From positions 14,880,001 to 14,944,000 of the forward strand of contig NC_086125.1 of assembly GCF_963921235.1 (NCBI RefSeq): DNA of 64,000 nucleotides, written 5' to 3'. The translations under genes and the position numbers were made by a program. Shown one piece after another: positions 42,318 to 64,000 of the stretch (position 1 is the stretch's first letter; every line of letters starts with the position of its first letter). The DNA is from Mobula hypostoma (taxonomy: Eukaryota). Under the pieces are notes generated by a model. The model ran no database searches and had not been told where the DNA came from. It saw only the letters and a list, made by a program, of their open reading frames with translations.

Positions 42318-42353
42318 AGTCCTGACGAAGGGTCTCGGCCTGAAACGTTGACT
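42318..42353 (+). ncRNA. Hammerhead motif with GUU cleavage triplet
   Basis: AGUC-CUGACGA-AGGGUCUCGGCCU-GAAA-CGUU/GACU. Confidence 0.65.
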
Positions 42354-43778
42354 GCACCTCTTCCTAGAGATGCTGCCTGGCCTTCTGCATTCACCAGCAA
42401 CTTTGATGTGTGTTGCTTGAATTTCCAGCATCTGCAGAATTCCTCGTGTTTACGTTTTATCTAGAGTCGGCCCTGACCAGCAGAGGTCTCAGATGCATAA
42501 ATCCAGATATTATAAAATATTTTAGAGCATTTGATTGCTTTCCAATCTCTAAATTTATGTTTAGATATTTAAGTGTTGAATATCTTAACGGATGTTAGAT
42601 GTTTTTCTTGCTCTAAGATATTCAGAACCAAGATTAGGAAATGGTAGTGGGTTTTGCTCCCTTCAGCCACTGGAGGTTATTTTCAAGGAGGAGTGCAGTT
42701 AACTGTTAACCATGTTATCGTGAGCCTAGTATCATGAATATGTCAAGTAAGGAAAGTAGATTCCACTTCCCCCCACACTCCAAAGCAGATAAGTGAACTA
42801 ATCGTGTCCCTCTGACCACCAATCCTCTACAAGTGGTTGTGCCTGAAAATGTTGAGCAATGGGGACTCTCTGAGAATGAGTGAGCAATTGAGAACCTTTG
42901 GGGAATCATCTGCACGGTTGCCTCCTGGTCCCTACTTGCGAAGAATTCAACGATTCCCTCATCTCCATCAACAGAGTGGTCAGCCTTGCCTGCACTGGGG
43001 ATTGATTCAATAGTGCACTCACCATGTCTGGATTGCTTCGGGGCTGATAGGTCAAGGTAACAGCCAACGGACTGAACAATCCTGACCAGGGTGTGTGAAT
43101 GGAGCTCTGACTGGAGAGGTGCACCTGTCACAGATACACTGGAGAGTATAACGCACTGTATTCCTCGCAATCTGCTGCATTTCTAGGCTTACCACTCTGT
43201 CCTCCAAGAATAAGTGTACGGAAAAGCTGCCTAAACACTTCCAGTGAGGAATGTTGAAGTTCCCATCTTGAGTAGATCCTACACTTTTTCTACTATCAGT
43301 GACTCTTCCAAAAGTTGTTCATTACAGAGCAACTGAGACAGGGCAATAAGTGGTAACCAGGAGTTTCCATTTTCAGTTTGATCTAATGCCATGAAGCTTT
43401 GGAATCAATTTTGAGAAGTCCTAAGGCTTTGTAACATTGGGTCACTAGCTCTTGTGGGTCTGTACTTTTGCAGGAAGAGGCATGTGGTGCTGGGCATGCA
43501 TCCAAAGGCATGAGTCAAAAGCACATTGTTCTGTCTTGGAGGCCTCCAGCCTCCTTAGTGCTGGTGAGTGACTTCAATTTGAGGAAGTTCTGAATACTTC
43601 ATTAGCAACAGCTTTGGACACAAAGGTGCACCTTCGATGGGTAAAACCTTCTGAGGGTAACTTTTACATCTGTGCCCCATCTGATAGTGAACATCTATGT
43701 GGCCACAGGTGTAAAAGCTACCAGTCTGAAAGTATGTACAGGGCAGCATTTTCTGACTCCTCGAGTTTAAGTTATTGA

Positions 43779-44520
43779 GAAGCAAAAATGGTTTACTCTC
43801 ATGAAATCCAGAACATATTTGGAGGTATGTGGCTTTATCCAAAACTGCGGCTGTGCATGAGGAACTGAGACGAGAAGGTGCATATCACTAATTGCCACAT
43901 ATTCTCCAGTATGTTGCAGTTGAGATCATGGTGCTAAGGAGTTATCAAACTCAGAGAGAGTTTCATTCTGACGAACAGGATGGAGGTCACCATCAACTTG
44001 AAAAGTTGAATCCCATTTCACATCGATGGAGGAATGATTATTGAGTATTCTTTTAGTTCCATTGAAGGAGGAATTCACCCCACCTTCAGATGAAGTGAAA
44101 TTAGGAGATGCTGTGATGGAGGTGATAAGATGTTGATGGGGCGGGGGTGGGGGTGAAGGAACAGAGCAATGTTGTTCCTTACCCTAAACTTACCTGAGCA
44201 AATGATATTTGGGTCTGTTGTGTGTAACTGTCTAGAACTTGCAGGAGCTCCACTCCTTGTGCAATTTAATCTGCACCCTGCTGCGGATGAGTTGTTACTT
44301 TGAGGTGATATGTGTTGTTCAGTTTAAATATTCTGGTGTCCACAACAACATTCTGCTCCTCTGTCAGTGCTCCATGCGTAAACCGGGAAAGGATGATTCT
44401 GTATGAAATCTCTCTTGTGGTCTAAATGACATATTCCCTTACATTTTGTATGCGTCTTGTCAAATCAGAAGAGCACCTCAGAGGTAAAATCCCTGCCAGG
44501 TCATCGACAGTCTCCTGCTG
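43779..44520 (+). pseudogene. Truncated lectin paralogue, array unit 1 (promoter, exon 1, intron 1, half TM exon)
   Basis: Colinear matches to the reverse complement of 22280-22980; donor GTGAGT changed to GAGAGT; TM remnant 44469-44520. Confidence 0.75.
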
Positions 44521-45018
44521 TCCAGAAGATTGACTTTCAGCATAAGGTGTATTTATGTCACAAATTAAAAAGTAACCAGTGTAACACTACTGAGGCTTCG
44601 TATGTGATGAGACATGGGTGTGGCAGGGAGTTCGATAGAGTCACGGCCGGTGGGAAGAAACTGTTTCTCTCCTAACAGTGCTTGGCCTAATGCTATGGTA
44701 CCTGTTGCTTAATGGTAGGGGGGTCAAAGAGTTTGTGGGATGGATGGGAGAGATGCTTGACATTGCTAAAGACAGCACCCCTGATAAATATCCTGGATGG
44801 GTGGAAGAGGGACCCTGCTGATTCTCTTAGGAGTCCTTGCAATCCCTTATAGGGCCTTACTAGGTCATATACCATAAATATCAGCATAGTATGTAGTATT
44901 GAGAAAGCGAGAAACTGTAGAATATAAGCCCACATTACCTTGAGTGTGGCAAATCAGGTAGGTGAGGTGACTTGGAAGGTGTATGGGATACTGGCCATTA
45001 ATCAGGTCACTGAATACA

Positions 45019-46288
45019 TAAAGACATAAGAAATAGGAGCAGGAGTCGGCCATCTGGCCTGTCAAAACTGCTCTGCCATTCAATAAGATCATGGCTGATC
45101 TGGCCATGGACAACGCCAGCTACCTGCCTTTTCCCCATAACCCTTAATTTCCCTACTATGCAAAAATCTATTCAACCCTATCTTAAATTTATTTTCTGAG
45201 GTAGTCTTCACTGCTTCATTGGGCTGAGATTTCCGCAGATTTACCACTTTACGGGAAAAGCAGTTCCTCCTCATCTCCATCTTAAACCTACTCCCCTGAA
45301 TCTTGAGGCTATGTACCCTAGTTCCAGTCTCATCTACCAGTGGAGGCAACATTCCTGCCTTTATCTTATCTACCCCTTTCATAATTTTATATGTTTCTAT
45401 AAGATCTCCTCTCATTCTTCTGAATTCCAGCGAGTACCGTCCCAGGCAACTCAATCTGTCTTCATAGTCTAACCCCCTCATCTCTGGAATCAACCTGGTG
45501 AACCTCCTCTGCACCACCTTCAAAGCCAGTATATCCTTCCTCAAGTGAGACCAGAACTGCACGCAGTACTCCAGATGCAGCCTCACCAGTACCCTGTACA
45601 GTTGCAGCATAACCTCCCTATTCTTAAATTTAATCCCTCTACCAATGAACGCCAGCATTCCATTTGCCTTTTTGATAGCCTGCTGCACCTGCAAAACAAC
45701 TTTTTGTGATTCATGCACAAGAACTCCTAAGTCCCTCTGCACAGCAGCGTGCTGCAATTTTTTACCAGTTAAAAATAATCTATTCTCCAGTTTTTCCTTC
45801 CAAGGTGGATGACCTAATATTTACCAACATTTTACTCCATCTGCCAGACCCTTACCCACTCACCTAACCTATCTATATCTTTGCAGACTCTCTGCATCTT
45901 CTACACAATTTGCTTTTCCAATCAATTTAGTATCATCAGCACTTAGATACACTACACTTGGTCCCCTCTTCCAGATGGTTAATGTATATCAGTATATAAT
46001 GTACAGGTGTGGGCTCAGCACTGAACCCTGTGGCATACCGCTCTCCACTGATTGCCAACCAGAGTAACACCCATTTATCTCAACTCTACTTTCTATTAGT
46101 TAACCAATCCTCCATCCATTCTAATACTTCACCCGCAACTCCATACATTCTTATCTTATGGATAAGTCTTTTATGTGGCACCTTATCGACCGCCTTCTGG
46201 AAATCCAAGTAAATAATGCCTATCTGTTCCCCTCTATCCACTACACTCATTATATCCTTAAAGAACTCCAGTAAGTTTGTCAACCTGG
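45019..46288 (-). mobile_element. CR1 3' fragment, private to array unit 1
   Basis: YLDFQKAVDK, LEYCVQFW, RMRGDLIETYK; absent from other units; TACA duplicated at the ends. Confidence 0.92.
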
Positions 46289-47822
46289 TACAGGTTGGGG
46301 TGAGGCTTTATAAATCTTTGTTCAGATTTTATGTAATTATGGTCAGTATGTCACCGTGAGCAGAGGTCGGCATGGTAGCCTAGTGGTCAGCACAACAGTT
46401 TACAGTAACAACGACCCGGGTTCAAATCCCGCAGCTGCCTATAAGGAGTTTGTACATTATCTCTGGATCCAAAGACCTACTGGTTGGTAGGTAAATTGGC
46501 CATTGTAAACATCCTGTGATTAGGCTAGGATGAAATCCGAGGATTACAACGTAGCATGGCTCAAAAGGCTGCTGCTATATCACAATAATAAAAGAAATGA
46601 TGCCTGGGTTAGAGCAATTCATTTATGAATAGAGACCTGAAGCAACATACATATTTTTCCTGGAGAAGATGAGGTTAAAGGATGAAGCACATAATGCTAT
46701 GAACATATAGATAGGGCAGGCTTAGGAAATTTGTACCTATATCAGAGATAGCCCAAACTATATATCTAAGGTAAAGGAGAGGAAATGTAAGGTACATCTG
46801 TTGGGCACCTTTGTCAGAGACTGGTGATTACCTGGAAAACACTGTCTGAGAAAGCTGTTGATGTTGGGCTGCTGACAGCATTTAAGAAATATCCAGATGA
46901 GCATTTGAATCACTAAGGCACAAAGATATTAATAGACCAAGTGCTGCTGGATGGCATTGGTATCTAAAGTCACAGGTCAAGTTGGTTCCATGCTGTATGG
47001 CTCCACGATTCTAAGACAAGCAGCTCATTTACTGAAGTCCCTATTGAGCCCGCAAGGCTGCCCAAAAAGAAGTTCAATAAGCACCAGAGAGACTTGTCTG
47101 AAAGTTGACCCTGAGATAAATAGACTGCTGAACCTGCTCAGCTACATATCATGGCTTGTGACAACTAAGTGGGTGAGATTTGCTTCCTGACGAAGCTTAG
47201 GATAGGAGGAGGTGAAGGAGCAAATTTCTTATGTAGAGAATATTAGTGGGCAGGTGAGTAGCACAGATCTGGGAGGGGGATGAGTCTACCACCATTTTGT
47301 ATGTGATTGCCTCTGTGACCTCAGTTGTGTTCTCATTCTGAGAGGAATTTAAAGAGTAACACCTGTACCTGGCTGAGACACTTAGAGACCCATGTGGTCA
47401 ATTTTCTTTATACCAGGTGCTTTGGCTCTCTGCTCAATTATCATGAGCTTACACTGCAGGACTGTGGACTGAGCTGTTGGCCCTCAGCAGTGGCTAAGGA
47501 TTCTTGTCTAAACTCTTAAGATGCTCTGCTGTCTCAGAGCAGGGTCTGATTCAGAGTGAGGTGAGGGGCTTCTGTAATTACCAATTCCCTCCATCACACC
47601 GAATCATGCCTTTGCTAATTTCAAGCACTCATGATTCCAATGGGTTCAGAGCCTGGCGAATGACTATTGTCAATTATTCCTGGCAAAAGAAGTTCAGCGG
47701 ATCTGCTCTTTAGCTACATTTTCACAGCAGTATCATGGATTCTGGGTGCCATGGCTTTTAGCAAACCCTTTCAAGCTATGTACCATTTTACAGTGACCAG
47801 ATAGTCTGTGGTCATCATGGAC

Positions 47823-47862
47823 CTGATGCCAGCCCCCCAGGCCTGGGTCGACGTAGTAGTAG
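47823..47862 (+). mobile_element. 40-bp extremely truncated retroelement with (GTA)3 tail
   Basis: 10-bp TSD CATCATGGAC (47813-47822 and 47863-47872); empty site in the other units. Confidence 0.75.
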
Positions 47863-48254
47863 CATCATGGACACTGGTTAATCACTGAGAAATGGCTTTG
47901 ACAAATCCCTGAGCAAACACGAAGGCTCTATTGAACAAAACTGTACTGTTGCAAGAAGAGGGCCTACTTATGTTGTTGGGCGTGCATCCAGAGGCAGGGC
48001 TTGAGTGCACTTTGTTCTGTCTCCTTAGTGCTGGTGAGTGACTTCATTTTGAGGAAGTTCTGAATACTTCATTTGCACCAGCTTTGGACACAATGGTGCA
48101 CCTTCAAAGGGTGAACCATTCCCAGGGTAACTTTTACATCTGTGCATCATCTGACAATGAGCATCGATGTGCCAACGGGTGTGAAGCCACCAATCAGAAA
48201 GTATGCGCCGAGCAGCATTTTCTGACTCTTTGGCCCCCATGATAAAGTTCTTGG

Positions 48255-49021
48255 GAAGCAAAAATTGTTTCCTCTCATGAACCCATTTGGAATTTATGAG
48301 AGAAAACCAGAACCTATTTGGAGGTATGTTGGTTTATCCAAAACTGCGGTTGAACATGAGGAACTGAGACTAGAAGGTGCATATCTCTGATTGCCACATG
48401 TTCTCCAATATGCTGCAGTTGAGAACATGGTGCTAAGAAATTATTATCAAACTCAGAGGGAGTTTCATTCTGATGAACAGAATAGAGATCACCATCAACT
48501 TGAAAAGCTGAATCCTGTTTCACATCAGTGGAGGGATGATTATTGAGTATTCTTTTAGTTCCTCGGAAGGAGGAATTAACCCCACCTTCAGATTAAGAGT
48601 TGATATGATGGAAGTGATGAGATGTTGATGGGGCGGTGGGGGGGGGGAGTGGGAGGAAAGGGATAAGGCAATGTTGTTCCTTACGCTGAACTTACCTGAG
48701 CAAATGATATTTGGGTCTGTTGTGTGTAACTGTCTAAAACTTGCAGGAGCTCCACTCGCTGTGCCATTTTAATTTGCACCCTGCTGTGGTTGAGGGTTCT
48801 TTAATTGAAGTGATATGTGTTGTTTAGTTTAAGTATCCTAGTGTCCACAACAATATCCTGCTCCTCTGTCAGTTCTTGACGTGTAAATTGGGAAACGATG
48901 ATTCTGGATCTGTCTTGCGGCCTGAATGACATTTTCCCTTGAATTTTTCATGTGCCCTATCCAATCAGAAGAGCACCTCAGAGATAAAATCCCCCATCAG
49001 GTCATCTACAGTCTCCTGCTG
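48255..49021 (+). pseudogene. Truncated lectin paralogue, array unit 2
   Basis: As unit 1; TM remnant after cAG at 48969 reads EHLRDKIPHQVIYSLLL versus GATGRKLSPRIIYFLLG. Confidence 0.78.
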
Positions 49022-50896
49022 TCCCGATGATTGATTTTTACAGCATAAGGTGTATTTATGTCACAAATTAGAAAGTAACCAGCATAACACTACTGAGGCT
49101 TCGTATGTGATGAGACCTGGGTGTGGCAGGGAGCTCAACACAGTCATGGCCTGTGGGAAGAAACTGTTTCCCTCCTAACAATACTTGGCCTCATGCTATG
49201 GTACCTCTTGCTTAATGGTTAGGGGGTCAAAGAATCTATGGGATGAATGGGAGAGATGTTTGACATTGCTAAAGGCCCTGCATTTGCAGCACTCCTGATA
49301 AATAACTTGGATGGGTGGAAGAGAGACCGTAAATATCAGTATAGCATGTGGTATTGAGAAAAAGAGGGACTGTAATATATAAGTCCACATATCCTTGAAT
49401 GTGGCAATCTAGCAGGTGATGTGTTTTGGGAGGTATATGGTATACTGGCCATTAATCAGGAAACTAAATACAGGTTGTGGTGAGCTTTCATAAAACTTTG
49501 TTCATATTTCATGCATTATTGTCACGATGTCAGTCTGCAGAGGGCAGCATTGTAGCGTAGTGGTGAGCACAATGGGTTTCTGTACCAACGACCCCGGTGC
49601 AATTCCCGCTGTTGCCTGTAAGGTATTTAGATGTTATCTCCATACATTTCATCTCACTGTATAAGGACATATGGGTTAGAAGGCGAATTGGTCATTGTTG
49701 GGACTGAAGGGAGGCAAGGCTCAAAGGCTTCTGTTGTATCTCAATAATAATAAAAAAGTTGCCTAGGAGAGAGTAATTCATTTGTGAATAGAGACCTGAA
49801 GCAACATACCTATTTTTCCTGGAGTAGGTGGTGTGAAAAGATAAGGTACATAATGTTATGAAGCCTATAGATAGCGCAGGCTGTAGAAAACTTACCTATA
49901 TCAGAGAAAGAGAAAATTATATATTTAACGTAAAGGAGAGGAAATGTAGGATGTATCTGTTGGCCATCTTTGTCATCCAGAGAGTACTGAGTGCCTGGAA
50001 TTGACTGCCTGAGAAAGGTGATGATGTTGGGCTGCTGACAGCATTTAAGAAATGTCTAGATGAGCATTTGAATCATGAAGGCACAAAGATGTCAGTGGAG
50101 CAGGTGCTGCTGGATGGCATTGGTAGCTAAGGGCCACAGGTCACAGTTCAAGTTGGTTCCATGGTGTATGGCTCCAGAATCCATGACAAGCAGCTCATTT
50201 CCTGAAGTCTGGATTGAGCCTGTGTGGCTGCCCAAAAGGAAGTTCAATAAGCATCAGAGAGACTTATCTAAATGTTGACCCTGAAATAAGTGGACTGCTA
50301 AAACTGCTCGGCTATGTATCCCGGCCTGTGTGCACTAAGTGGGTGAGATTTGCTTCCTCACGATGTTGGGATAGGAGGAGGTGAAGGAGCAAAGCTCCTG
50401 TGTAGAGATTAGTTTTGGGCAATGCGATAAAACAGATTTGGGAGGGGATGGGTCTAACACCATTTTGCATGTGATTGCCTCTGTGACCTCAGTTGTGTTC
50501 TCATTCTGAGAGGAGTTTAAAGAGTAACACCTGTACCTGGCTGAGACACTCAAGGCCCCACCTGGTCAATTTTCTTTATACCAGGTGCTTTGGCTCTCTG
50601 CTCAATTATCATGAGCTTACACTGCAGGACTGTGGACTGAGCTGTTGGCCCTCAGCAGTAGCTAAGGATTCTTAACCAACTTCTTGAAATGTTCTGCTAT
50701 CTCAGATCAGGGCCTGATTCAGAGTGAGGTGAGGGGCTTCACTAATTACCAATTCTCTCCAACACACGGAGTCATGACCTTGCTAGTGACAAGCACTTAT
50801 GATTCCAATGGGATCAGAGCCTACTTCATGACTATTGTCAATAATTCCTGGAAAATAAGTTTAGGGGATATGCTCTTTAGCTGCCTTTTCACAGCA

Positions 50897-53866
50897 TGTC
50901 ATGGTCCGGTCTGTCATTCTTTATTCCAGGTTTTCCAGTTTTCCCTTGTCCTGTTGTGTGCCTTAATTGAGACACATGATTCCCATTTTGGGCTGGCTAT
51001 GTAAACAGCTCCTGGGTTCAGCTTCAGTTGCTGGACTGTTCCCTCCCCTTTCCCCTTCCTTCTGAAGCCTCGCCTGCTACCTTTGCCTGAAGCGTCGCCT
51101 GCTACCTTCGCCTGTGTCCTCGCCTGTAACACCATCAAGTTCAACTGCCAGGGCAAGATCGGGGCCTTGCTGTGTCTAGATAAGGAACTGTCTTTCATTA
51201 TTTGATACTGTCGCTTTGTGTCCTCACCTTTGCTAGGTCAGTCCGGCCGTTTGCTGCTACCTTGAGTTGGGAACCGTCTGTGTCCATGCCTTCACTAGGT
51301 AGGTCTGGCCATTTGCTGTTACCTTGTGTTGGGAACCGTCTCTGTGCCTACACCTTCGCTAAGTGGGTCTGGCCATTTGCCACTACCTTGTGTTGGGAAC
51401 CGTCTCTTCATGTTCAGCATTCTCTGTATGAGTCCTGGCTCTACGTCCTATTCCCAAGGACGTGTCCAGGTTATGTGTTCCATGTTCCTGTCTCTCAAGA
51501 CCAAGGCTCTGTTTTCTGCGTTCCTGTCTCCCAAGATTACCAAGGCTCTGTTTTCTGCGTTCCTGTCTCCCAAGATTACCAAGGCTCTGTGTTTTGTTTC
51601 CTGTTCTCCCAAGACCAAGTCAAGGCTTTGGGTTCTCGTCCTGTCCATGTGCCTCATCCTGTACAGAAGTTCCACATCCAGTCCTGTAGCTACGTCCAGT
51701 CCTGGCTCTATGTTCCATGTTCCTGTCTCTCAAGGCCAAGGCTCTATGTTCTGCGATCCTGTCTTCCAAGATTACCAAGGTTCTGTGTTCTGCGTTCCTG
51801 TCTCCCTCCACCAAGGCTCTGCGTTCCTGTCTTCTCAGGACCAAGTCAAGGCTTTGTGTTCTCGTCCTGTCCATGTGCCTTGTCCAGCCCAGGAGTACCT
51901 CGCCCAGCCTGGTGCTGGTGTTCCCTCATCTTTCCAGGAGTCTCACGTCCAGTCCTGTTGCCACTCCTCATCCTGTAGCCACATCTTTTCCTCACCTAGA
52001 TCCGGGGTCCAAGCCTGAGTCAAGACCCAGGTTCCGGGTCCCTGTCCAGTCTTTGGCTCGGAGTCCTTGTCCAGGTTCCAAGTTCCTAATTCCTCGTCCA
52101 GGTCCCGCTTTCCAAGTCTAGTCCTAGTCCAGGCCCTGTATCCTAGCCACGTCCAGGGCCTGTGTCTTGTCGAGCGTCATTTCTTTCCCACTTCCCTTGC
52201 TTGCTTGACGCACCTAGTACTGTTCCTAATATGTCAGTGTCTGTGTCTTGCATTTGGATCCACTTCCAGCGCCCCCCGTATGACAGAACAGTCCAGTCAA
52301 ATATGGATCCTGTGACACAGACACTGTTGTTTTACTCTTGCCATCCTGGGTTCCCTCCAGTTGAATGCCCCCCACCACCTGCTTGCGCTGTCCTTTGTCC
52401 TGGAGAACCTGTTAGGTCGCCAGGAGGCTCCCATAGAGGGAGGGGTGGGGTATTGTCATGGTACGGTCCATGAAGTCCACATTCTGGTTCACGGTCCAGT
52501 CCATTCTTCCTTATTCCAGGTTTTCCAGTTTCCCTTGTCCTGTTGTGTGCCTTAATTGAGGCACACGGTTCCCATTTTGGTCTGGCTACATAAATAGCTC
52601 CTGGGTTCAGCTTCAGTTGCTGGACTGTTTCCTCCTCTTCCCCTTTGGCCTGAAGCCTCGCCTGCTACCTTCTCCTGAAGCCTCGCCTGCTACCTTCATC
52701 TGTGTCCTCGCCTGTAACACCGTGAGGTTCAACTGCCAGGGCAAGATGGGGCCTGCTGTGTCTAGATAAGGAACTATTTTTTGTTGTTTGGAACTGTCCC
52801 TTTGTGTCCTTGCCTTCGCTAAGTATGTCCGGCCATTTGCCGCTACCTTGAGTTGGGAACTGTCTCTGTGTCCACGCCTTCACTGGGTAGGTCCAGCCAT
52901 TTGCCGCTACATTGAGTTGGAAACTGTCTCTGTGGACACGCCTTCGCTAGGTAGATCCAGCCGTTTGCCGTTACCTTGAGTTAGGAACTGTCTCTGTGTC
53001 CACGCCTTCGCTAGGTAGGTCCGGCTGTTTGCCGCTACCTTGTTTTGGGGACCATCTCGTTGTGTTCAGCATTCTGTGTATGAGTCCCGGCCCTACATCC
53101 TGTTCCTAAGGAGGGGTCCCGGCCCTACGTACTGTTCCTAAGGAGCGGTCCCGGCTCTGTGTTCTGCGTTCCTGTCTCCCAAGATTACCAAGGCTCTGTG
53201 TTCTGTTTCCTGTTCTCCCAAGACCAAGTCAAGGCTTTGGGTTCTCGTCCTGTTCATATGTTTCATCCTGTGCAGGAGTTCCACATCCAGTCCTGCAGCC
53301 ACATCCAGTCCTGCCTCTGTGTTCCATGTTCCTGTCTCTCAAGACCAAGGCTCTGTGTTCTGCGTTCCTATCTCCCAAGATTGCCAAGGCTCTGTGTTCC
53401 TGTCTCCCTCAACCAAGGCTCTGCATTCCAGTCCTCTCAAGACCAAGTCAAGGCTTCATATTCTTGTCCTGACCATGTGCCTCGTCCAGCCCAGGAGTAC
53501 CTCGCCCAGCCCGGTGCTGGGATTCCCTCGTCCTGTCCAGTCCTGTTGCCACTCCTCGTCCAGTAGCCACGTCTTGTTCTCACCTAGATCTGGGATCCGA
53601 GCCTGAGTCAAGAGCCGGGTCCCTGTCCAGTCTCTGGCTTGGAGTCCTTGTCCAGGTTCCAGGTTCTTAGTTCCTCGTCCAGGTCCCACTTTCCTAGTCT
53701 AGTCCTAGTCCAGTCCCTGTATCCTAGACTCGTCCAGGGCCTGTGTCTTGTCCAGCGTCGTTTCTTCCCTACTTCCCTTGCTTGCTTGACGCACCTAGTC
53801 CTGTTCCCAGTGCTTCAGTGTCTGTGTCTTGTATTTGTGTCCGCTCCCAGTGTCCCCCTTATGACA
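50897..53866 (+). mobile_element. Non-autonomous Gypsy element: LTR 50897-52285, 168-bp interior, LTR 52454-53866
   Basis: Both LTRs TGTCATGG...ATGACA; TSD CAGCA/CAGCC; interior starts GAACAGTCCAGTCAAATATGGATCCT and ends in PPT AGAGGGAGGGGTGGGG; empty site in the other units. Confidence 0.9.
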
Positions 53867-54324
53867 CAGCCGCGTCATGGTTTCTGGGTGTCATGGCTTT
53901 TAGCAAACCTCTTCAACCTATGTACTATTTTACAGTGACCAGATAGTCTGTGGTCATCATGGACACTGGTTAATCACCAGGAAACTTCTGTGACAAATCC
54001 TTGAGCATGCATTAAGGCTCTATTGAACGAAACTTTGATGTTGCAAGAAACCGGTCTACCTATGTTGTTGGGCATGAATCCAGAGGCAGGGCTTGAATGT
54101 ACATTGTTCTGTCTTGGTGGCCTCCAGCATCCCTAGTGCTGGTGAATGACTTCATTTTGAGGAAGTTCTGAATACTTCATTAGTACCAGCTTTGGACAGA
54201 ATGGTGCACCTTCTGAGGGTAATTTTTACATCTGTGCTCCATCTGACAATGAACATCTCTGTGACAACAGGTGTGAAGCCACCAGTCTGAAAGTATGTAC
54301 CGGGCAGCACTTTCTGACTCCTGG

Positions 54325-55032
54325 TCAGAAAAATGGTTTTCTTTCATGAAATCCAAGACCTATTTGGAGGTATTTTGTTTTATCCAAAACTGCGGTTGAA
54401 CATGAGGAACAGAGACTAGAAGGTGCATATCTCCGATTGCCACACGTTCTCAAATATGTTCAAGTTGAGAACAGGGTGCTAAGGAGCTATCAAACTCAGG
54501 GAGAGTTTCATTCTGATAACAGGATGGAGATCACCAACAACTTGAAAAGCTGAATCCTATTTCACATCAGTGGAGGTATGGTCATTGAGTATTCTTTTAG
54601 TTCCACTGCAGGAGGAATTCACCCCACCTTCAGATTAAGAGATAATATGATGGAGGTGATAAGATGTTGATGGGGTGGTGGGGAGAAAGGGATAGGACAA
54701 TGTTGTTCCTTACCCTGAACTTACCTGAGCAAATGATACCTTGGGTCTTTTGTGTGTAACTGTCTAGAACTTGGAGGAGCTCCACTCCCAATGCAATTTT
54801 AATCTGCACCCTGCTGTGGTTGAGGGGTCTTTATTTGTTGTTTAGTTTAAATATCCTGGTGTCCACAACAATATTCTGCTCCTCAGTCAGTATTCCATGT
54901 GTAAAGTGGGAAACGATGACTCTGTCTTGCGGTTTGAATGACATTTTCCCGTACATTTTGCATGTGTCACATCCAACCAGAAGAGCATTTCAGCGATAAA
55001 ATCCCCATTAGGTCATCTGCAGTCTCCTGCTG
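54325..55032 (+). pseudogene. Truncated lectin paralogue, array unit 3
   Basis: Same colinear blocks; TM remnant 54981-55032. Confidence 0.75.
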
Positions 55033-55044
55033 TCCAGAAGATTG

Positions 55045-55365
55045 ACTTTTTCAGCATAAGGTGTATTTATGACACAAGTTAAAAGGTAACCAGTATAACA
55101 CTACTGAGGCTTCGTATGTGATGAGACCTAGGTCTGGCACGGAGTTCAACAGAGTCACAGCCGGTGGGAAGAAACTGTTTCGCTCCTAACAGTGTTTGGC
55201 CTAATGCTATGGTACCTCCTGATTAATGGTGGGGGTCAAAGAGTTTGTGGGATGGATGGGAGAGATGCTTGACATTGCTAAAGGCCCTGCATTTGCAGCA
55301 CCCCTGATAAATAACTTGGATGAGTAGAAGAGAGACCCTGCTGATCCTTCCAGCAAACCTCGCAA
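55045..55365 (-). mobile_element. Rex1/Babar 3' fragment, present in every array unit (also near 44530, 49035, 58470, 61850)
   Basis: Reverse complement reads SNVKHLSHPSHKLFDP...RYHSIR...NSFFP; it abuts the TM-exon remnant. Confidence 0.7.
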
Positions 55366-55597
55366 TCCTTTTTAGGGCCTTACTCAGTCATATACCATAA
55401 ATATCAGGAAAATATGTAGTATTGAGGAACTGTAAAATAAAAGTTCGCATATCCTTGATTGTGGCAATCAAGCAGGTGATGTGGTTTGGGAGGTGTATGG
55501 AATACTGGCCATTAATCAGGAAACTGAATACAGTTTGTGGTGAGGTTTTATAAAACTTTGTTCATATTTCATGCATTATGGTCACTATGTCAACTGC

Positions 55598-55790
55598 AGA
55601 GGGCAGCATGGTAGCGTAGTGGTGAGCACAATGATTTTCAGTACCAACGACCCAGGTGCAATTCCTGCTGCCGCCTGTGAGCGGTTTGTATGTTACCTCC
55701 ATTCGTTTTGTCTCACTGTCCAAAGACCTACAGGTTAGAAGGCTAATTGGTCATGGTTGGGATTGAAGGGAGGCAAGGCTCAAAGGCTGC
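55598..55790 (+). mobile_element. tRNA-derived SINE, present in every array unit (also near 46362, 49538, 58962, 62415)
   Basis: GGCAGCATGGTAGCGTAGTGG A-box region and GG(T/G)TCAA(A/T)TCC-like B box. Confidence 0.7.
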
Positions 55791-55958
55791 TGTTGTATCT
55801 CAATAATAAAAAAATGTTGCCTGGGATAGAGCAATTCATTTGTGAATGGAGACCTGACACAACATACCTATCTTCCCTGGAGTAGATGATGTGAAAAGAT
55901 AAGGTACATAAAGTTATGAAGCATATAGATAGGGCAGGCTGTAGGAAACATGTACCTA

Positions 55959-56277
55959 CGAGGGGTGATTGATAAGTTCATAGCCTAAGGTAGGAGGAGT
56001 CAGTTTTAGAAAACCTAGCAAATTTATTTTTCAACATAGTCCCCTCCTACATGTACACATTTCGTCCAGCGGTCTTAGAGCATACGGATCCCTTCTTTGT
56101 AGAAGGGGTCCACAGCAGGGGTGATTCATAAGTTTGTGGCCGAAGGTAGAAAGAGATGAGTTATACAGCTCTCGTTATATGCATCTGCAGTTCAACTCTT
56201 TGCGTGAAAATGCAGGAAGTTTGGTTAATAACTCATCTCCTTCAAACTTAGGCAACAAACTTATCAATCACCCCTTG
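55959..56277. mobile_element. Mariner-type MITE (319 bp), private to array unit 3
   Basis: TA TSD; TIR CGAGGGGTGATTGATAAGTT / AACTTATCAATCACCCCTTG; internal TIR copy near 56117; empty site TGTACCTATATCAGAGA in other units. Confidence 0.92.
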
Positions 56278-57724
56278 TATATCAGAGATAGAGAAAACTG
56301 TATATTTAAGGTAAAGGAGAGGAAATGTAGGGTGTATCTGTTGGCAATCTTTGTCATCCAGAGAGTAGTGAGTACCTGGAATGCACTGCCTGAGATGGTT
56401 GTTGATGTTGGGCTGCTGACAAAATTAAGAAATGTCTACATGAGCATTTGAATCACTAAGGCACAAAATGTCAACGGAGCAAGTGCTACTGGATGGCATT
56501 GGTATCTAAGGGCCACAGGTCAAGTTGGTTCCATGCTGTATGGCTCCATGATTCTATGACAAGCAACTCCTTTACTGAAGTCCAGACTGAGCTGCCCAAA
56601 AGGAAGTTCAATAAGCACCAGAGAGACTGATCTGAATGTTGACCCTGAGAGAAGTGGGCTGCTGAAACTGCTCAGCTATGCATCCAGACCTGTGTGCACT
56701 AAGTGGGTGAGATTTGTTTCCTCACAAGGCTTGGGATAGGATGAATTGAAGGAGCAAAGTTGCTGTGTAGAGAATAGTTGTGGCTAAACCAATAAAATAG
56801 ATCTGGGAGGGGGATGGGTCTACCACCATTTTGCATGTGATTGCCTCTGTGACCTCAGTTGTGTTCTCATTCTGAGAGGAGTTTAAAGAGTAACACCTGT
56901 ACCTGGCTGAGACACTTAGAGACCCATGTGGTCAATTTTCTTTATACCAGGTGCTTTGGCTCTCTGCTCAATTATCATGAGCTTACACTGCAGGACTGTG
57001 GACTGAGCTGTTGGCCCTTAGCAGTGGCTAAGGATTCTCGTCTAACCTCTTGAGATGCTCTGCTGTCTCAGATCAGGGCCTGATTCAGAGTGAGGTGAGG
57101 GGCTTCAGTAATTACCGGTTCCCTCCATCACACTGAGTCATGACCTTGCTGGTGACAAGCATTCAAGATTCCAATGGGATCAGAGCCTACCTAATGACTA
57201 TTGTCAATAATTCCTGGCAAAAGAAGTTTAGGGGATCTGCTGTTCAGCTGCATTTTCATAGCAGTGTCATGTACTCTTGGTGTCATGGCTTCTAGCAAAA
57301 CCCTTCAAACTATGTAACATTTTACAGTGACCACATAGTCTGGGGTCATCATGGACACTGATTAATCAGCAGGAAACTGCTGTGAGAAATCCTTGAGCAA
57401 ACATGAAGGCTCTATTGAACAAAACTGTACTGTTACAAGAAGAGTGCATACCTATGGTATTGGGCATGCATGCAGAGGCAGGACTTAAGTGAATATTGAT
57501 CTGTATTGGTGGCCTCCAGCCTCCTTAGTGCTGGTGAGGAAGTTCTGAATGCTTCATTAGCACCAGCTTTGGACACAATGGGGCACCTTCTGAGAGTAAA
57601 TTTACATCTGTGCCCCATCTGTTAGTGAACATCTATGTACCAACAGGAGTAAAGCCGCCAGTCTGAAAGTATGTACCAGGCATAATTTTCTGACTACTTT
57701 GGGCTTCCATGTTTAAGTTATTGG

Positions 57725-58457
57725 GAAACAAAAACGTTTTTTATTATGAAATCCAGAACCTATCTGGAGGCATGTAGGTTTATCCAAAACTGCGGTTGAG
57801 CAAGAGGAACTGAGACTAGAAGGTGCATTATCTCTGATTGCCACATGTTCTCCACTACGTTCCAGTGGAGAACATGGTGCTAAAGAGTTATCAATCTCAG
57901 AGAGAGTTCCTTTCTGATAAACAGAATGGAGATCACCTTCAACTCGAAAAGCTGAATCCTGTTTCACATCAGTAGAGGAATGGTTATTGAGTATTCTTCT
58001 AGTTCCACTGAAGGAAGAATTCATCCCACCCTCAGATTAAGAGATGCCATGATGAAAGTGATGAGATGTTGATGGGGCGGGTGGGGATGGGGTGAAGGAT
58101 AGGACAATGTCGTTCCTTACCCTGAGCTTACCTGAGCAGATGATATTTTGGGTCTGTTGTGTGTAACTGTCTAGAACTTGCAGGAGCTCCACTCCCAGTG
58201 CAATTTTAATCTGCTCTCTGCTGCGGTTGATGGTTCTTTCTTTGAAGTGATATGTGTCGTTTAGTTTCGATATCCTAGTGTCCACAGCAATGTCCTGCTG
58301 CTCTGTCAGTTCTCCATGTGTTAAGTGGGAAATGATTCTGGGTGATTCTCTCTTGTGGTCTGAATGACATTTTCTCTTGCATGTTGCATGTGTCAAGTCC
58401 GAGCAGAAGTGAACTTCAGAGATAACATCCCCTCAGGTCAGCTACAGTCTCCTGCTG
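57725..58457 (+). pseudogene. Truncated lectin paralogue, array unit 4
   Basis: Same colinear blocks; TM remnant 58407-58457. Confidence 0.75.
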
Positions 58458-60119
58458 TCCAGAAGATTGACTCTTTCAGCACAGGGTGTATTTATGTCAC
58501 AAATTAGAAAGTTACCTGTAACCAGAGGCTTCATATATGAGGAGACCTGGGTGTGGCAGGGAGTTCAATAGACTCATGGCCGGGGGGAAGAAACTGTTTC
58601 CCTCCTAGCAGTGCCTGTGTTAATGCTATGGTACCTGCTGTCTGATGGTAGGAAGTCAAAGAGTTTTCGGGTGGGATGGGAGGGATGCTTGACATTGCTA
58701 AAGGCCGTTTACTTGTAGCACCCCTGATAAATATCCTGAATGGGTGGAAGAGACCATAAATATCAGAACAGCATGTACTATTGAGAAACAGAGGAACTGT
58801 AAAATGTAAGTCCACATATCCATGAATGTGGCAAACAAGCAGGTGATGTGGTTTGGGAGGTGTATGGGATACTGGCCATTAATCAAAAAACTGAATACAG
58901 GTTTAGTGAAGTTTTATAATACTTTGTTCGTATTTCATGCATCATGGTCACTGTCAGTGTGCAGAGGGCAGCATAGGAGCATAGTCGTTATCACGACGGC
59001 TTTCAGTACCAGTGACCCAGGACAATTCCCGCTGCTGCCTATAAGGAGTTTGTATGTTATCTCCATACGTTTCATCTCACTGTCCAAATGCATACCGGTT
59101 AGAAAGCTAATTGGTCATTGTTGGGATTGTTGGGAGGCAAGGCTCAAAGGCTGCCGTTGTATCTCAATAATAAAAAAAAAGTTGCCTGGGATAGAGCAAC
59201 TCATTTGTGAATAGAGACCTGGAACAACATATCTATTTTCCCTGGAGTAGATGATGTGAATAGATAAGGTACATAAAGTTATGAAGCCTATAGATAGGGC
59301 AGGCTGTAGGAAACATGTACCTATATCAGAGAGAGAGAGAAAACTATATATTTAAGGTAAAGGAGTGGAAATGTAGAGTGTAACTGTTGGACATGTTTGT
59401 CATCCAGAGAGTAGTGAGTACCTGGAATGCACTTACTGGGAAATTTGTTGATGTTGTTGATGAGCATTTGAATCACTAAGGCACAAAGATATCAATGGAA
59501 CAAGTGCTGCTGGATGTCATTGGTATCTAAGGGCCACAGGTCAGAGGTCAAGTTGGTTCCATGGTGTACGGCTCCATGATTCTATGGCAAGCAGCTCAGC
59601 AACAGAAGTCCAGACTGAGCTTGTGTCGCTGCCCAAAAGGAAGTTCAATAAGCACCAGAGAGACTTATCTGAAGGTTGACCCTGAACATTTTTTTATTAT
59701 TGAGATACAGCAGCAGCCTTTGAGACACTCAGGGCCCCATGTGGTCAATTTTCTTTATAGCAGGTCCTTTGGCTCTCTGCTCGATTATCATGAGGTTACA
59801 CTGGTGGACTGTGGACTGAGCTGTTGGCCCTTAGCAGTGGCTAAGGATTCTCGACCAACCTCTTGAGATGCTCTGCTATCTCAGAGCAGGGCCTGTTTCA
59901 GAGTGAGGCATGGGGTTTCATTAATTACCAGTTTCCTCCATCACACAGAGACTTGACCTTGCTAGCTTCAAGCACTCATGCGTCCATTGGGTTCAGAGTC
60001 TACCTAATGACTATTGTCAATAATTCCTGGCAAATACGTTTAGGGGATCCGCTCTTTAGCTGCATTTTCATAGCAGTGTCATGGTTTCTGGGTGTCATGG
60101 CTTTTAGCAAACCCCTTCA

Positions 60120-60682
60120 CTTGGAGTACTGTGGGCAGTTTTGGTCTCCTTATTTAAGAAAGGATGTGCTGACGTTAGAGAGGGTACAGAGAAGATTCAC
60201 TAGAATGATTCCCAGAATGAGAGGGTTAACATATGAGGAATGTTTGTCCGCTCTTGGACTGTATTCCTTGGAGTTTGGAAGAATGAGGGGAGACCTCATA
60301 GAAACATTTCGAATGTTGAAAGGCATGGACAGAGTGGATGTGGCAAAGTTGTTTCCCATGATGGGGGAGTCTAGTACGAGAGGGCATGAGTTAAAGATTG
60401 AAGGGCGCCCATTCAGAACAGAAATGTGAAGAAGTTTTTTTAAGTCAGAGGGTGGTGAATCTATGGAATTTGTTGCCACGGGCGGCAGTGGAGGCCAAGT
60501 CATTGGGTGTATTTAAGGCAGAGATTGATAGGTATCTGAGTAGCCAGAGCATCAAAGGTTATGGTGAGAAGGCGGGGGAGTGGGACAAAATGGGAGAATG
60601 GATCAGCTCATGATAAAATGGCAGAGCAGACTCGACGGGTCGAATGGCCGACTTCTGCTCCTTTCTCTTATGGTCTTATGGT
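60120..60682 (+). mobile_element. CR1 3' fragment, private to array unit 4
   Basis: LEYCGQFWSPYLRKD...RMRGDLIETF; tail (TATGGTCT)n; CTTCA duplicated at the ends. Confidence 0.92.
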
Positions 60683-61104
60683 CTTCAACCTCTGCAACAT
60701 TTTACAGTGACCAGATAGTCTGCAGTCATCATGGACACTGGTTAATCACTAGGAAACTGCTGTGACAAACCTTTGAGCAAACATAAAGGCTCTATTGAAC
60801 AAAGCCGTTCTCCTGAAAGAAGAGCGCCTACCTGTGTTGTTGGACATGCATCTAGAGGCAGGGCTTGAATGTACATTGCTCTTTCTTGGTGGCCTCCAGC
60901 CCCCTTAGTGCTGGTGAGTGACTTCATTTTCAGGAAGTTCTGAATACTTCATTAGCACCAGCTTTGGACACAATGGTGCACCTTCTTAGGGTGTGCCTCA
61001 TCTGACAACGAGCATCTATGTGCCAACAGGTGTGAAGCCACCAGTCAGAAAGTACATGCTGGGCAGCATTTTCTGACTCCTTGACCCCCCCGTTTAAGTT
61101 ATTA

Positions 61105-61837
61105 GGAAGCAAAAATGGTTTTCTCTCATGAAATCCAGAAACTATTTGTAGGTATGTTGATTTATCCAAATCTGCGGCTGTGCATGAGGAACTGGGACTA
61201 GAAGGTGCATATCTCTGATTGCCACATGTTTTCCAATATGTTGCTGTTGAGAACATGGTGATAAGGAGTTATCAAACTCAGAGTTTCATTCTGATGAACA
61301 GATTGGAGATCATCATCAACTTGAAAAGCTGAATCCTGTTTCACATTAGTGGAGGAATGGTTATTGAGTCTTCTTCTAGTTCCACTGAAGGATGAATTCA
61401 TCCCATCCTCAGATTAAGAGATGCCATGATGAAAGTGATGAGATTTTGATGGGGCAGGTGGGGATGGGGTGATGGATAGGACAATGTTGTTCCTTACCCT
61501 GAACTTACCTGAGCAGATGATATTTTGGGTCTGTTGTGTGTAACTGTCTAGAACATGGAGGAGCTCCACTGCCTGTGCAATTTTAATCCTCATCCTTCTG
61601 TGGTTGAAGGTTCTTTCTTTGAAGTGATATGAGTTGTTTTGTTTAAATACATAGGTGTCCATAACAATATCCTACTCCTCTGTCAGTTCTCCATATGTAA
61701 AGTAGGAAATGGTGAGCCTGGATGTTTCTGTCTTCTGGTCTAAATGACATTTCCTCTTAAATTTTTCATGTGTCATGTCCAACCAGAAGAGTACCTCAGA
61801 GATAAAATCCTCGTCAGGTCATGTACAGTCTCCTGAT
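61105..61837 (+). pseudogene. Truncated lectin paralogue, array unit 5
   Basis: Same colinear blocks; TM remnant 61787-61837. Confidence 0.75.
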
Positions 61838-64000
61838 GTCCAGAAGATTGACTTTTTCAGCATGAAGTGTATTTATGTCACCAAGTAGAAAGTAACTACT
61901 ATAACACTACTAAGGCTTCATACGTGATGAGACCTGGGTGAGGCAGGGTGTTCAATAGACTCACGGCCGGGGGAAAGAAACTGTTTCCCTCCTATCAGTG
62001 CCTGGGCTAATGGTATGGTACCTGCTGTCTGATGGTAGGGGGTCAAAGAGTTTGTGGGTGGGATGGGAGGGATGCTTGACATTGCTAAGGGCCCTGCATT
62101 TGTAGCACCCCTGATAAATATGCTGAATGGGTGGAAGAGGGACGTCGATGATCCTTCCAGCGGCCCTCGCAATCCTTTATAGGGCCTTACTAGGTCATAG
62201 ACCATAAATATCAGAACAGCATGTACTATTGAGAAACAGAGGATCTGTAAAATATGTCCATATATCCTTGAATGTAGCAAATCTTGTAGGTGTCGTGATT
62301 TGGGAGGCATATGGAATGCTGGCCATTAATCAGGAAACTAAATACAGACTGTAGGGTGGTTTTATAAAACTTTGTTCTTATTTCATGCATTATGATCATG
62401 TTGTCACAGTGTGAAGAGGACACCATAGGGGCGTAGTGGTTAGCACAACAGTTTTCAGTACCAACAACCCAGGTGCAATTCCCACTACTGCCTGTAAGGA
62501 GTTTGTATGTTATCTCCATACATTTCCTCTCACACAGTTCAAAGACCCTACTGGAGGTTAATTTATCATTGTAATTGTCCTGTCATTAGGCTAAAATGAA
62601 ATCCAAGGATTACTGGGTGGCTTAGTTCAAAGGCTGCTGCTATATTTGAATAATAAAAAAATGCTGCCTGTGATAGAGCAATTTATTTATCTATAGAGAT
62701 GTGAAGCAACATACGTATATCTGCTGGTGTAAATTAGGTTAAAAAATGAGGTACGTAATGCTATAAGGTATATAGATCAGGCAGGCTCAGGAATCTTGTA
62801 CCTCTATCAGAGATAGACAAAACTCTATAGTTAGGGTAAAGGAGAGGAAATGTAAGGTACGTCTGTTGGGCACATTTGTCAGAGAGTAGTGATTACCTGG
62901 AATGCACTGTCTGAGAAAGTTGTTGAAGTTTGGCTGCTGACAGCATCTAAGAAATGTCTAGATGAACGTTTGAATCACTAAGGCACAAAGATATTAATGA
63001 ACCAAGTGCTGCTGGATGGCATTTGGTATCTAAAGGCCACTGGTCACAGGTCAAGTTGGTTCCATGCTGTACGGCTCCACGATTCTATGACAAGCAGTTC
63101 GTTTACTGAAGTCCAGACTGAGCTTGTGTGGCTGCCCAAAAGGAAGTTCAATAAGCACCAGAGAGACTTATCTGAAGGTTGACCCTGAGATAAGTGGGCT
63201 GCTGAACCTGCTCAGCTATGTATCCAGACCTGTGAGCACTTAGTGGGCGAGATTTGCTTCCTCATGAAGTTTGGCATAGGAGGAGGTGAAGGAAAAAAGT
63301 TCCTGTGTAGAGAATAGTTGTGGGCAATGCAATAACACAGATCTGGGAGGGGGATGGGTCGACCACTATTTTCCAGGTGATTGCCTCTGTGACCTCAGTT
63401 GAGTTCTCATTCTGTGAGGAGTACCTATACCTGACACCTGAGACACTCAGGGACCTGTGTGGTCAATTTTCTTTATAACAGGTCCTCTTGCTCTCTGCTT
63501 GAATATCATGACGTTATACAGCCAGATTTTGGACTGAGTTGTTGGTCCTCAGCAGTGGCTAAGGATTCTCATCCAACCTCTGGGTTGAGATTCCATAGCC
63601 ACTGCTCAGCCGGGCCTGATTCAGAGTGAGGTGAGGGGCTTCATTAATTACGAATTCCTTCCATCACACTGAGTATTGACAAGCACTCATAATTCCAATA
63701 GGTTCAGAGCCTGGCTAATGACTATTGTCAATAATTCCTGGCAAGAGAAGGTTAATGGATCTGCTCTTTAGCTGCATTTTCATAGCAGTGTCATGGCTTT
63801 TAGCAAAACCCTTCAACTTATGTAGCATTTTACAGTGACCAGATAGTCTGCGGTCTTCAAGGACATTGGTTAATCACCAGGAAACTGCTTTGACCAATCC
63901 CTGAGGAACCGTGAAGAAAATTGTAGTGTTGGAAAAGAGGGCCTACCTATGGTGTTGGGTATGCATCCAGAGACATGAGTCAAAAGCACATTGTTCTGTA

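What the first reader, a model, noticed from the sequence alone, without database searches (positions are those of the whole stretch)
43450..64000. A >20-kb tandem array built from the dead 5' half of a C-type lectin receptor gene
Seen: each ~3.1-kb unit holds about 750 bp colinear with the promoter-to-TM-exon region of the intact lectin gene 21 kb away, in inverted orientation. Gene versus unit blocks: GAAGCAGAAGTGATTTC..TCCAGAAC..TTGGAG / GAAGCAAAAATGGTTTT..TCCAGAAC..TTGGAG; GCTGAGCATGAGGAACTG / GCTGTGCATGAGGAACTG; CAGCTGAGAACATGG / CAGTTGAGAACATGG; GTGAGTTTCACACTGAT / GAGAGTTTCATTCTGAT; TCCCCTCGGATCATCTAC / TCCCCCATCAGGTCATCTAC (PRIIYFLL / PHQVIYSLL). All five units lack the exon-1 GT donor and break at the same point mid-TM exon, next to an antisense Rex1 tail. 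Inference: a paralogue was inactivated once and its promoter-bearing stub was then amplified as a macrosatellite. It may be neutral birth-and-death debris, or an array of leukocyte promoters/enhancers, a lncRNA or small-RNA source, or a recombination substrate for lectin copy-number change.
Basis: partly seen in the sequence, partly recalled or inferred. Interest (0 to 1): 0.8.

Follow-up and report, generated by a model that had tools for sequence, protein, structure and literature searches.

The report
Tandem array of dead lectin-gene stubs
A stretch of at least 20 kb is made of five-plus head-to-tail copies of the broken front end of a C-type lectin receptor gene fused to two retrotransposon tails; it is real and old, but looks like ordinary decaying debris of a gene family rather than a working element.

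Summary
Window 43.4-64.0 kb is a head-to-tail array: five full units, the start of a sixth, and it runs off the window. The shared core is about 3.1-3.25 kb and units are 83-89% identical.

A profile of the units matches the 5' region of the minus-strand lectin gene (22985-22265) colinearly over about 750 bp. The score is E 8.6e-25, 76 bits against at most 1.3 bits in 200 shuffles.

- **Unit anatomy:** upstream DNA, promoter, exon 1, intron 1 and the first ~50 nt of the TM exon. Then an antisense LINE tail, a second LINE tail in sense, a remnant of the neck exon, and 0.7 kb of unassigned DNA. There are no lectin-domain exons.
- **Order of events:** all units share the same lesions and the same two LINE fragments, so the copy was dead before it was amplified.
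- **Copy number:** the stub has single-copy depth in the source DNA run, so it is not a young dispersed TE.
- **Age:** a related species holds unit-specific orthologues at about 97% identity, so the array predates that split.
- **Function:** the stub is no better conserved than the LINE parts, and three small presumed-RNA runs do not cover it.

The best reading is neutral birth-and-death debris, a composite macrosatellite with captured exons.

The parts
43400..64000 (+). Whole tandem array. Its left edge is at about 43400-43460, and the right end runs off the window.
   Evidence: Self-BLAST, unit alignment, junction alignment.
43460..47862 (+). Unit 1. It carries a private 1.27-kb minus-strand LINE insertion at 45018-46289.
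47863..53864 (+). Unit 2. It carries a private 2.96-kb insertion at 50905-53864, made of two 1.4-kb GC-rich blocks full of minisatellites.
53865..57256 (+). Unit 3. It has a private extra piece of about 320 bp at 55958-56278, and its start codon is changed to AGG.
57257..60682 (+). Unit 4. It carries a private plus-strand LINE insertion at 60119-60682. That LINE family has a word depth of 1e5-1e6 in DNA runs.
60683..63810 (+). Unit 5. It has no large private insertion, and its exon-1 remnant is frameshifted.
63811..64000 (+). Start of unit 6, cut by the end of the window.
   Evidence: 43485-43534 = 63950-63999; 60683-60882 = 63811-63997.
61101..61846 (+). Lectin stub of unit 5 (core 432-1181): promoter blocks, ATG at 61255, intron 1 and the first ~50 nt of the TM exon. 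The same part lies at 43774-44528, 48250-49029, 54322-55040 and 57720-58465.
   Evidence: nhmmer E 8.6e-25, alignment A1, coordinate map.
61850..62226 (-). Antisense 3' tail of a LINE of the family seen at 25.5-26.7 kb, in unit 5. It is present at the same place in all units.
   Evidence: Minus-strand 'RNSFFPPAV' motif, alignment, strand-specific z-scores, raised depth of 600-1100.
62227..63086 (+). Sense 3' part of a second LINE family, in unit 5. It is present in all units and ends directly at the neck-exon remnant.
   Evidence: nhmmer hits to the copies at 35.1-35.7 kb, tblastn, tail alignment.
63087..63262 (+). Remnant of the neck exon plus about 100 nt of the following intron, in unit 5. 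The same part lies at 47013-47188, 50183-50358, 56556-56722 and 59584-59698.
   Evidence: nhmmer core 2396-2571 = 19324-19109, E 0.0011; 0 of 200 shuffles reach it; alignment.
15702..22811 (-). Intact C-type lectin receptor gene. Exon 1 is 22811-22781, the TM exon 22333-22231, the neck exon 19341-19270, and the lectin-domain exons 18608-18457, 16868-16759 and 15835-15702.
   Evidence: Sequence and splice sites read directly. Pfam Lectin_C matches on the three last exons.
22265..22985 (-). The part of the gene that is homologous to the array stub.
32511..32840 (+). Third paralogous promoter and exon-1 copy (ATG at 32759). It has the same orientation as the array, and other repeat-like sequence follows about 80-110 nt after the ATG.
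   Evidence: nhmmer core 299-609, E 2.4e-10, alignment, sequence.

Best explanation
This is a non-processed pseudogene fragment that became the unit of a composite macrosatellite.

An old paralogue of the neighbouring type II C-type lectin receptor gene was disabled. One LINE tail sits antisense in its transmembrane exon. A second LINE tail sits in sense at its neck exon. Everything between the two is gone.

A 3.1-kb segment was then duplicated head to tail, most likely by unequal crossing-over or replication slippage, to at least five or six copies in a short time. The segment runs from about 430+ bp upstream of the promoter to about 0.85 kb past the neck exon, and it contains no lectin-domain exon.

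Since then the copies have decayed independently by about 7-8% each and have picked up private TE insertions. They have been passed on to at least two related species.

Shown here: the anatomy, the shared lesions, the star-like divergence, the single-copy depth and the orthologues in a second species. Inferred: the mechanism of amplification and the lack of function.
For: - Homology to gene exons together with introns: E 8.6e-25, far above shuffles. The neck exon is colinear further on.
- The window has no lectin-domain exon outside the intact gene.
- Both LINE fragments and the TM break are at identical positions in all units.
- The reading frames are dead. There is a stop 9-16 codons after the conserved VIY of the TM exon in every unit. 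U3 has no ATG and U5 is frameshifted.
- The unit tree is star-like: 558 private against 135 shared 2:3 substitutions.
- Four insertions are private to single units.
- The stub has a word depth of 8-25, with contigs at 7-10, in the source DNA run. The LINE parts reach 1e3-1e6.
- A second species has unit-specific contigs for U4 and U5 with 73 differences in 2582 nt (2.8%), whereas U4 and U5 are only 84% alike.
- There is no extra conservation of the stub between units or between species.
- Rfam and tRNA scans found nothing, and no Pfam domain was found in the unit ORFs.
Against: - Two 60-nt windows, one in intron 1 and one at the 3' end of the neck exon, carry about three times fewer substitutions than the unit mean. 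Each has p about 2e-4 among about 50 independent windows.
- A GAGGAAGT (ETS-like) motif upstream is kept in all units. Some local constraint therefore cannot be excluded.
- The RNA evidence is thin. It rests on three small runs that are only guessed to be RNA, of unknown tissue, held as contigs.
- The full extent of the array and whatever lies downstream of it are outside the window.
Confidence: 0.8

Rival explanations
1. The array is kept because it works. It could be a bank of leukocyte-type promoters or enhancers, a decoy for transcription factors, or a source of lncRNA or small RNA that influences the neighbouring lectin genes.
For: - Short promoter blocks are shared by the gene, the 32.5-kb copy and the units, for example CATGAGGAA.
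- An ETS-like GAGGAAGT lies in a well-kept window upstream, and two windows show low substitution counts.
- The array has survived since before the split of two species.
Against: - The stub is no better conserved than the LINE-derived parts, either between units or between species.
- No contig of the three presumed-RNA runs lies on the stub.
- No CTCF-like motif recurs per unit.
- Survival over about 3% divergence is expected for neutral DNA.
- The conserved blocks can be left over from the time when the parent gene worked.
Confidence: 0.08
2. The units are alternative 5' cassettes, of the variable-first-exon type seen in protocadherin or UGT1A clusters, for a lectin gene whose constant exons lie downstream beyond the window.
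For: All units and the 32.5-kb copy point the same way (plus strand), and each unit has its own promoter-like region. What lies beyond position 64000 is unknown.
Against: - No unit keeps GT at any of the three positions homologous to the gene's donor sites.
- The TM exon is cut by a LINE tail and runs into a stop codon in all units.
- The exon-1 frame is lost in U3 and U5.
Confidence: 0.03
3. The shared 750 bp is not gene-derived. It is an old dispersed repeat that also happens to sit at the 5' end of the lectin gene, or the unit was captured and spread by a transposon.
For: Four places in one 64-kb window carry it: the gene, 32.5 kb, weakly 3.7 kb, and the array. Half of each unit is LINE-derived.
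Against: - The stub has single-copy depth in the DNA runs at 90% likeness or more.
- The homology covers the ATG exon, the intron, the TM exon and then the neck exon, in gene order and orientation.
- All copies lie inside one lectin locus, and the arrangement is strictly head to tail.
- Old copies below 90% identity elsewhere in the genome could not be counted.
Confidence: 0.05
4. The array is an assembly artefact, for example stacked haplotigs or a mis-joined repeat.
For: None specific. The array does run off the window.
Against: - Units differ by 11-17% and carry different private insertions.
- Contigs from the source sample match without differences.
- A second species has separate orthologues of U4 and U5.
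Confidence: 0.02

Closest known systems
Composite repeats / macrosatellites with captured exons (human T2T annotation, Hoyt et al., bioRxiv 10.1101/2021.07.12.451456)
   Same: The unit is kilobase-sized, is built from TE fragments plus other sequence, is arranged head to tail at a single locus, and includes captured exonic sequence. That paper attributes such arrays to unequal crossing-over.
   Different: The units here are old and diverged (83-89%), with no sign of ongoing homogenisation. Copy-number variation is untested. The captured part is a dead gene front end, not a coding unit as in D4Z4/DUX4.
Non-processed (duplicated) pseudogenes and gene fragments in birth-and-death immune receptor families, for example C-type lectin receptor clusters (general knowledge)
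   Same: Introns and promoter were copied along with the exons. The copy sits in the same cluster as an intact paralogue, carries disabling lesions, and has lost the ligand-binding exons.
   Different: The fragment was amplified to at least five or six tandem copies after its death. It is not a single relic.
Constant-less IgW V-cassette arrays noted earlier in this genome (s1-141831 and s1-141760, AI notes)
   Same: These are also tandem arrays of the front part of an immune gene that has lost its back part, in the same genome.
   Different: Those notes report some intact, expressed V genes with a plausible use. Here every unit is broken, and no expression was seen.
Variable-first-exon clusters (protocadherin, UGT1A; general knowledge)
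   Same: A tandem series of promoter-plus-5'-exon cassettes, all in one orientation.
   Different: Those clusters need intact exons and donor sites and shared downstream exons. The first two were tested here and not met.

Membership tests
Composite macrosatellite (tandem composite repeat) | Kilobase-scale unit repeated head to tail at one locus. | tested here: met
   Five full units plus the start of a sixth, with a core of 3.1-3.25 kb, all on the plus strand.
Composite macrosatellite (tandem composite repeat) | Unit composed of several kinds of sequence, including TE fragments. | tested here: met
   Gene-derived stub, antisense LINE tail, sense LINE tail, neck-exon remnant and unassigned DNA.
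Composite macrosatellite (tandem composite repeat) | High identity between units, or concerted evolution. | tested here: not met
   Identity is 83-89% and the pattern is star-like, with mostly private substitutions.
Composite macrosatellite (tandem composite repeat) | Copy number varies between individuals. | not testable with these tools
   Only contigs of short-read runs were available. No record spans the stretch.
Non-processed pseudogene fragment of a C-type lectin receptor gene | Homology to exons and introns of a family member, in gene order. | tested here: met
   E 8.6e-25 over promoter, exon 1, intron 1 and TM exon. The neck exon is colinear.
Non-processed pseudogene fragment of a C-type lectin receptor gene | Disabling lesions. 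| tested here: met
   The TM exon is cut by a LINE tail and followed by stops. There are no lectin-domain exons. The ATG or the frame is lost in two units.
Processed pseudogene (retrocopy) | Introns absent, poly(A) tail, no promoter. | tested here: not met
   Intron 1 and upstream DNA are retained.
Dispersed transposable element | Many copies across the genome. | tested here: not met
   The stub has a word depth of 8-25, against 1e3-1e6 for the LINE parts, at 90% likeness or more. Older copies elsewhere were not countable.
Variable-first-exon gene cluster | Each cassette has an open exon with a working splice donor. | tested here: not met
   No GT at the three homologous donor positions, and stops in all units.
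Variable-first-exon gene cluster | Shared constant exons downstream. | not testable with these tools
   The array runs off the window at 64000.
C-type lectin domain gene (the intact neighbour) | Lectin_C domain. | tested here: met
   The three exons match Pfam PF00059 positions 2-28, 40-65 and 73-107, with E values of 0.0038, 7.5e-05 and 0.0044 for the separate exons.
   Only RVT_1 on the related element at 25.5 kb and a shared C-terminal motif could be shown. A protein search with the unit ORF found nothing.

The most novel reading that the evidence does not exclude
The array is retained as a cluster of ETS-site-bearing promoter or enhancer remnants, or as a non-coding RNA source, that tunes expression of the neighbouring lectin receptor genes. 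This would be a gene-derived macrosatellite with a regulatory role in a cartilaginous fish.
Probability: 0.07. Interest if true: 0.55.

Novelty: new member of a known kind. Interest (0 to 1): 0.25.

Why it matters
The array is a clean, datable example of how a dead gene fragment fused to retrotransposon tails becomes the unit of a large tandem repeat in an immune-receptor cluster of a cartilaginous fish.

The order of events can be read directly from shared and private lesions: disabling first, then a burst of amplification, then long independent decay.

It is useful for annotation, because five or more promoter-plus-ATG remnants could be miscalled as genes. It also gives a neutral yardstick for the locus.

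It does not by itself change what is known about lectin receptors or macrosatellites.

Tried and rejected
- **Lectin-domain exons in the array.** tblastn with the gene's exons and motif scans found none anywhere outside the intact gene.
- **Known RNAs.** Rfam at gathering threshold and ARAGORN found nothing in the whole window.
- **Protein domains in unit ORFs.** Pfam gave nothing credible.
- **Naming the antisense LINE tail.** A protein search with a unit ORF gave no hit, so the name 'Rex1' stays unverified.
- **Earlier notes by sequence.** Both look-ups were blank, which means nothing.
- **CTCF-like motif recurring per unit**, as in DXZ4-type macrosatellites: none.
- **Two-unit higher-order repeat.** The longest BLAST pairs suggested one. 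It was rejected because the identity matrices are nearly flat and shared substitutions cluster by segment rather than by alternate units.
- **A longer exon 1 in the intact gene.** Reading through the GTGAGT donor stays open for 42 codons and resembles the unit ORF. However, no downstream donor fits the phase-1 acceptor of the TM exon well, so this is left open.
- **Expression.** No run on record as RNA holds the stretch. Three runs guessed to be RNA cover only the LINE parts. This is weak negative evidence only.


Full report
**1. Is the array there?**

Yes. Self-BLAST of the window shows a dense set of direct matches of 77-88% identity between 43.46 and 64.0 kb, and none like it elsewhere. 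Aligning the segments that start at 43460, 47863, 53865, 57257 and 60683 gives a shared core of 3245 columns. A sixth unit begins at 63811 and is cut by the window's end.

Length differences between units come from four private insertions:
- a minus-strand LINE at 45018-46289 in U1;
- 2.96 kb of GC-rich minisatellite blocks at 50905-53864 in U2;
- about 320 bp at 55958-56278 in U3;
- a plus-strand LINE at 60119-60682 in U4.

The left edge of the array lies at about 43400-43460.

**2. Is the unit related to the lectin gene?**

Yes, far beyond chance. A profile HMM of the unit core was searched against window 1-43000. Core 432-1181 hits 22985-22265 on the minus strand at E 8.6e-25 and 76.4 bits, as one colinear alignment. 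200 dinucleotide-preserving shuffles of 22200-23010 reached at most 1.3 bits. Identity is low, 54-55% over about 690 columns, a JC distance of about 0.7. The parent was therefore an old paralogue, not the intact gene.

**3. The intact gene.**

On the minus strand I read six exons:
- exon 1 at 22811-22781 (ATG, ten codons, donor G|GTGAGT, phase 1);
- a TM exon at 22333-22231;
- a neck exon at 19341-19270;
- three lectin-domain exons at 18608-18457, 16868-16759 and 15835-15702.

The last three match consecutive parts of Pfam Lectin_C. Motif scans and tblastn find no other lectin domain in the window.

**4. Anatomy of the unit (core coordinates; window coordinates in the parts list).**

- **1-431:** upstream DNA. 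Core 299-431 is shared with a third paralogous 5' end at 32.5 kb.
- **432-1181:** promoter blocks, ATG, intron 1 and the first ~50 nt of the TM exon.
- **About 1190-1560:** the 3' tail of a LINE, in antisense.
  - Its minus-strand translation carries 'RNSFFPPAV...LN' in U1, U3 and U5. This matches the 'RNSFFPSAIRFLN' end of the RVT_1 element at 25.5-26.5 kb.
  - Local alignment to that element gives z 3.1-7.7 on the minus strand and about 0 on the plus strand, in all five units.
- **1561-2395:** the 3' part of a second LINE family, in sense.
  - nhmmer gives E 1.6e-07 to the minus-strand copy at 35.1-35.3 kb.
  - tblastn supports the plus orientation.
  - The tail ends in ATGG-type repeats.
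- **2396-2571:** a remnant of the neck exon and about 100 nt of the next intron.
  - This matches 19324-19109 at E 0.0011.
  - The score is 6.4 bits against at most -2.9 in 200 shuffles.
  - It is colinear and in the right orientation.
- **2572-3245:** unassigned DNA of low copy number.

The unit nevertheless continues with a second LINE tail and the neck exon. Nearly everything between the two exon remnants is LINE-derived.

**5. The copy was dead before it was amplified.**

All units share the TM break, both LINE fragments and the lack of lectin-domain exons.

At the positions homologous to the gene's three donor GTs, every unit has something else: GA, GG or a deletion at exon 1, GA at the TM exon, and GA or GG at the neck exon.

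After the conserved 'V-I-Y' of the TM exon, every unit runs into a stop within 9-16 codons.

Later damage is private: AGG in place of the ATG in U3, and a 4-nt deletion in U5.

One caution applies. The 32.5-kb copy also lacks GT at the exon-1 donor position. That difference may be the ancestral state rather than a lesion.

**6. History.**

Units are about equally distant from one another, at 83-89% identity. There are 558 private substitutions against 135 shared 2:3 ones, and the shared ones cluster by segment. This fits a quick burst of duplication with some early exchange, followed by long independent decay.

In the stub, JC distance is 0.155 between units and about 0.7 to the gene.

A second species (coded organism B) has contigs that match U4 and U5 individually, with 73 differences in 2582 nt (2.8%). 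U4 and U5 themselves are only 84% alike. The array is therefore about five times older than that species split, and the gene/unit split is about 24 times older.

Earlier notes of this scan call the genome a devil ray. I did not verify that.

**7. Is the shared segment a dispersed TE?**

Not a young one. In contigs of the source sample, the stub has a summed word depth of 8-25, with single contigs at 7-10. The LINE parts of the same units reach 600-48,000, and the private LINE in U4 reaches 1e5-1e6.

Old copies below 90% identity elsewhere in the genome could not be counted. However, the gene-order colinearity of three exons argues for a gene origin.

**8. Any sign of function?**

- Between units, the stub (85-88%) is no better kept than the LINE part (80-89%).
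- Between the two species, the stub differs at 35 of 1315 positions and the rest at 38 of 1267.
- The three runs guessed to be RNA cover only LINE parts, not the stub. They are small, of unknown tissue, and held as contigs, so this is weak evidence.
- There is no Rfam family, no tRNA, no Pfam domain and no recurring CTCF-like site.

Two 60-nt windows (core 821-880 and 2441-2500) have about a third of the expected substitutions, each at p about 2e-4 among about 50 independent windows. A GAGGAAGT motif upstream is kept in all units. These are noted, not explained.

**9. Comparison with what is known.**

The closest kind is the 'composite' tandem repeat of the human T2T annotation. Those are kilobase units made of TEs plus other sequence, arrayed as macrosatellites, probably by unequal crossing-over, and sometimes with captured exons (10.1101/2021.07.12.451456).

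This array meets the structural features but not high inter-unit identity. It is also a non-processed pseudogene fragment of a birth-and-death receptor family.

It fails the tests for a retrocopy (introns kept), a dispersed TE (single-copy depth) and a variable-first-exon cluster (no open exons or donors).

An unchecked note of this scan (s1-145010) reports a 29-kb 'TE plus relic-gene' array on another piece of the same genome, so such arrays may be common here.

**10. Verdict.**

The most likely reading (0.8) is neutral debris. Interest is modest.

Noticed in passing
window 32511-32875 (+): A third paralogous lectin promoter and exon-1 copy. It shares the blocks AGAAGCAGAAGTGATTT and CATGAGGAA with the gene. 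From the ATG at 32759 its frame stays open for 51 codons and includes a G-Y-A-Q-I motif. The sequence then turns into other, repeat-like DNA. No TM or lectin-domain exon follows before the array.
   Followed up: partly
window 3586-3773 (-): A weak fourth match to the exon-1 region (nhmmer E 0.0045; tblastn 36% over 33 aa), with the ATG position changed. It may be another decayed stub or the start of a gene running off the left end.
   Followed up: no
window 22683-22811 (-): Reading through the intact gene's exon-1 donor stays open for 42 codons and resembles the unit ORF in frame (E-F-H-x-D-x-Q-x-G). It contains G-Y-Q-R-V. The ancestral first exon may have been longer and may have encoded a tyrosine motif.
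   Followed up: partly
window 50905-53864 (+), and 38073-38672: The private insertion in unit 2 is two 1.4-kb copies (82% alike) of a GC-rich block made of minisatellites with periods of 25, 64, 39 and 36 nt. A related piece lies inverted at 38.1-38.7 kb. The insertion site may carry a 7-bp duplication (GTCATGG).
   Followed up: partly
window 10062-10515, 14984-15069, 28135-28241, 41931-42451: A short repeat of about 100-210 nt occurs in copies that are 90-97% identical, in both orientations. One inverted pair sits just left of the array. It overlaps the hammerhead note s1-144960, but Rfam at gathering threshold reports no hammerhead here.
   Followed up: no
window 40539-40675: A perfect-looking tandem repeat of a 34-nt unit, four copies, 98% matches.
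   Followed up: no
units, core 821-880 and 2441-2500 (e.g. 61480-61540 and 63130-63190 in U5): Two 60-nt windows show about three times fewer substitutions between units than the unit average (p about 2e-4 each). The cause is unknown.
   Followed up: partly
window 15702-18608 (-): The lectin domain of the intact gene has QPN in place of EPN/QPD and W-Y-E in place of WND. It also lacks the two N-terminal cysteines of long-form domains, so classical calcium-dependent sugar binding is doubtful. This agrees with note s1-144959.
   Followed up: partly
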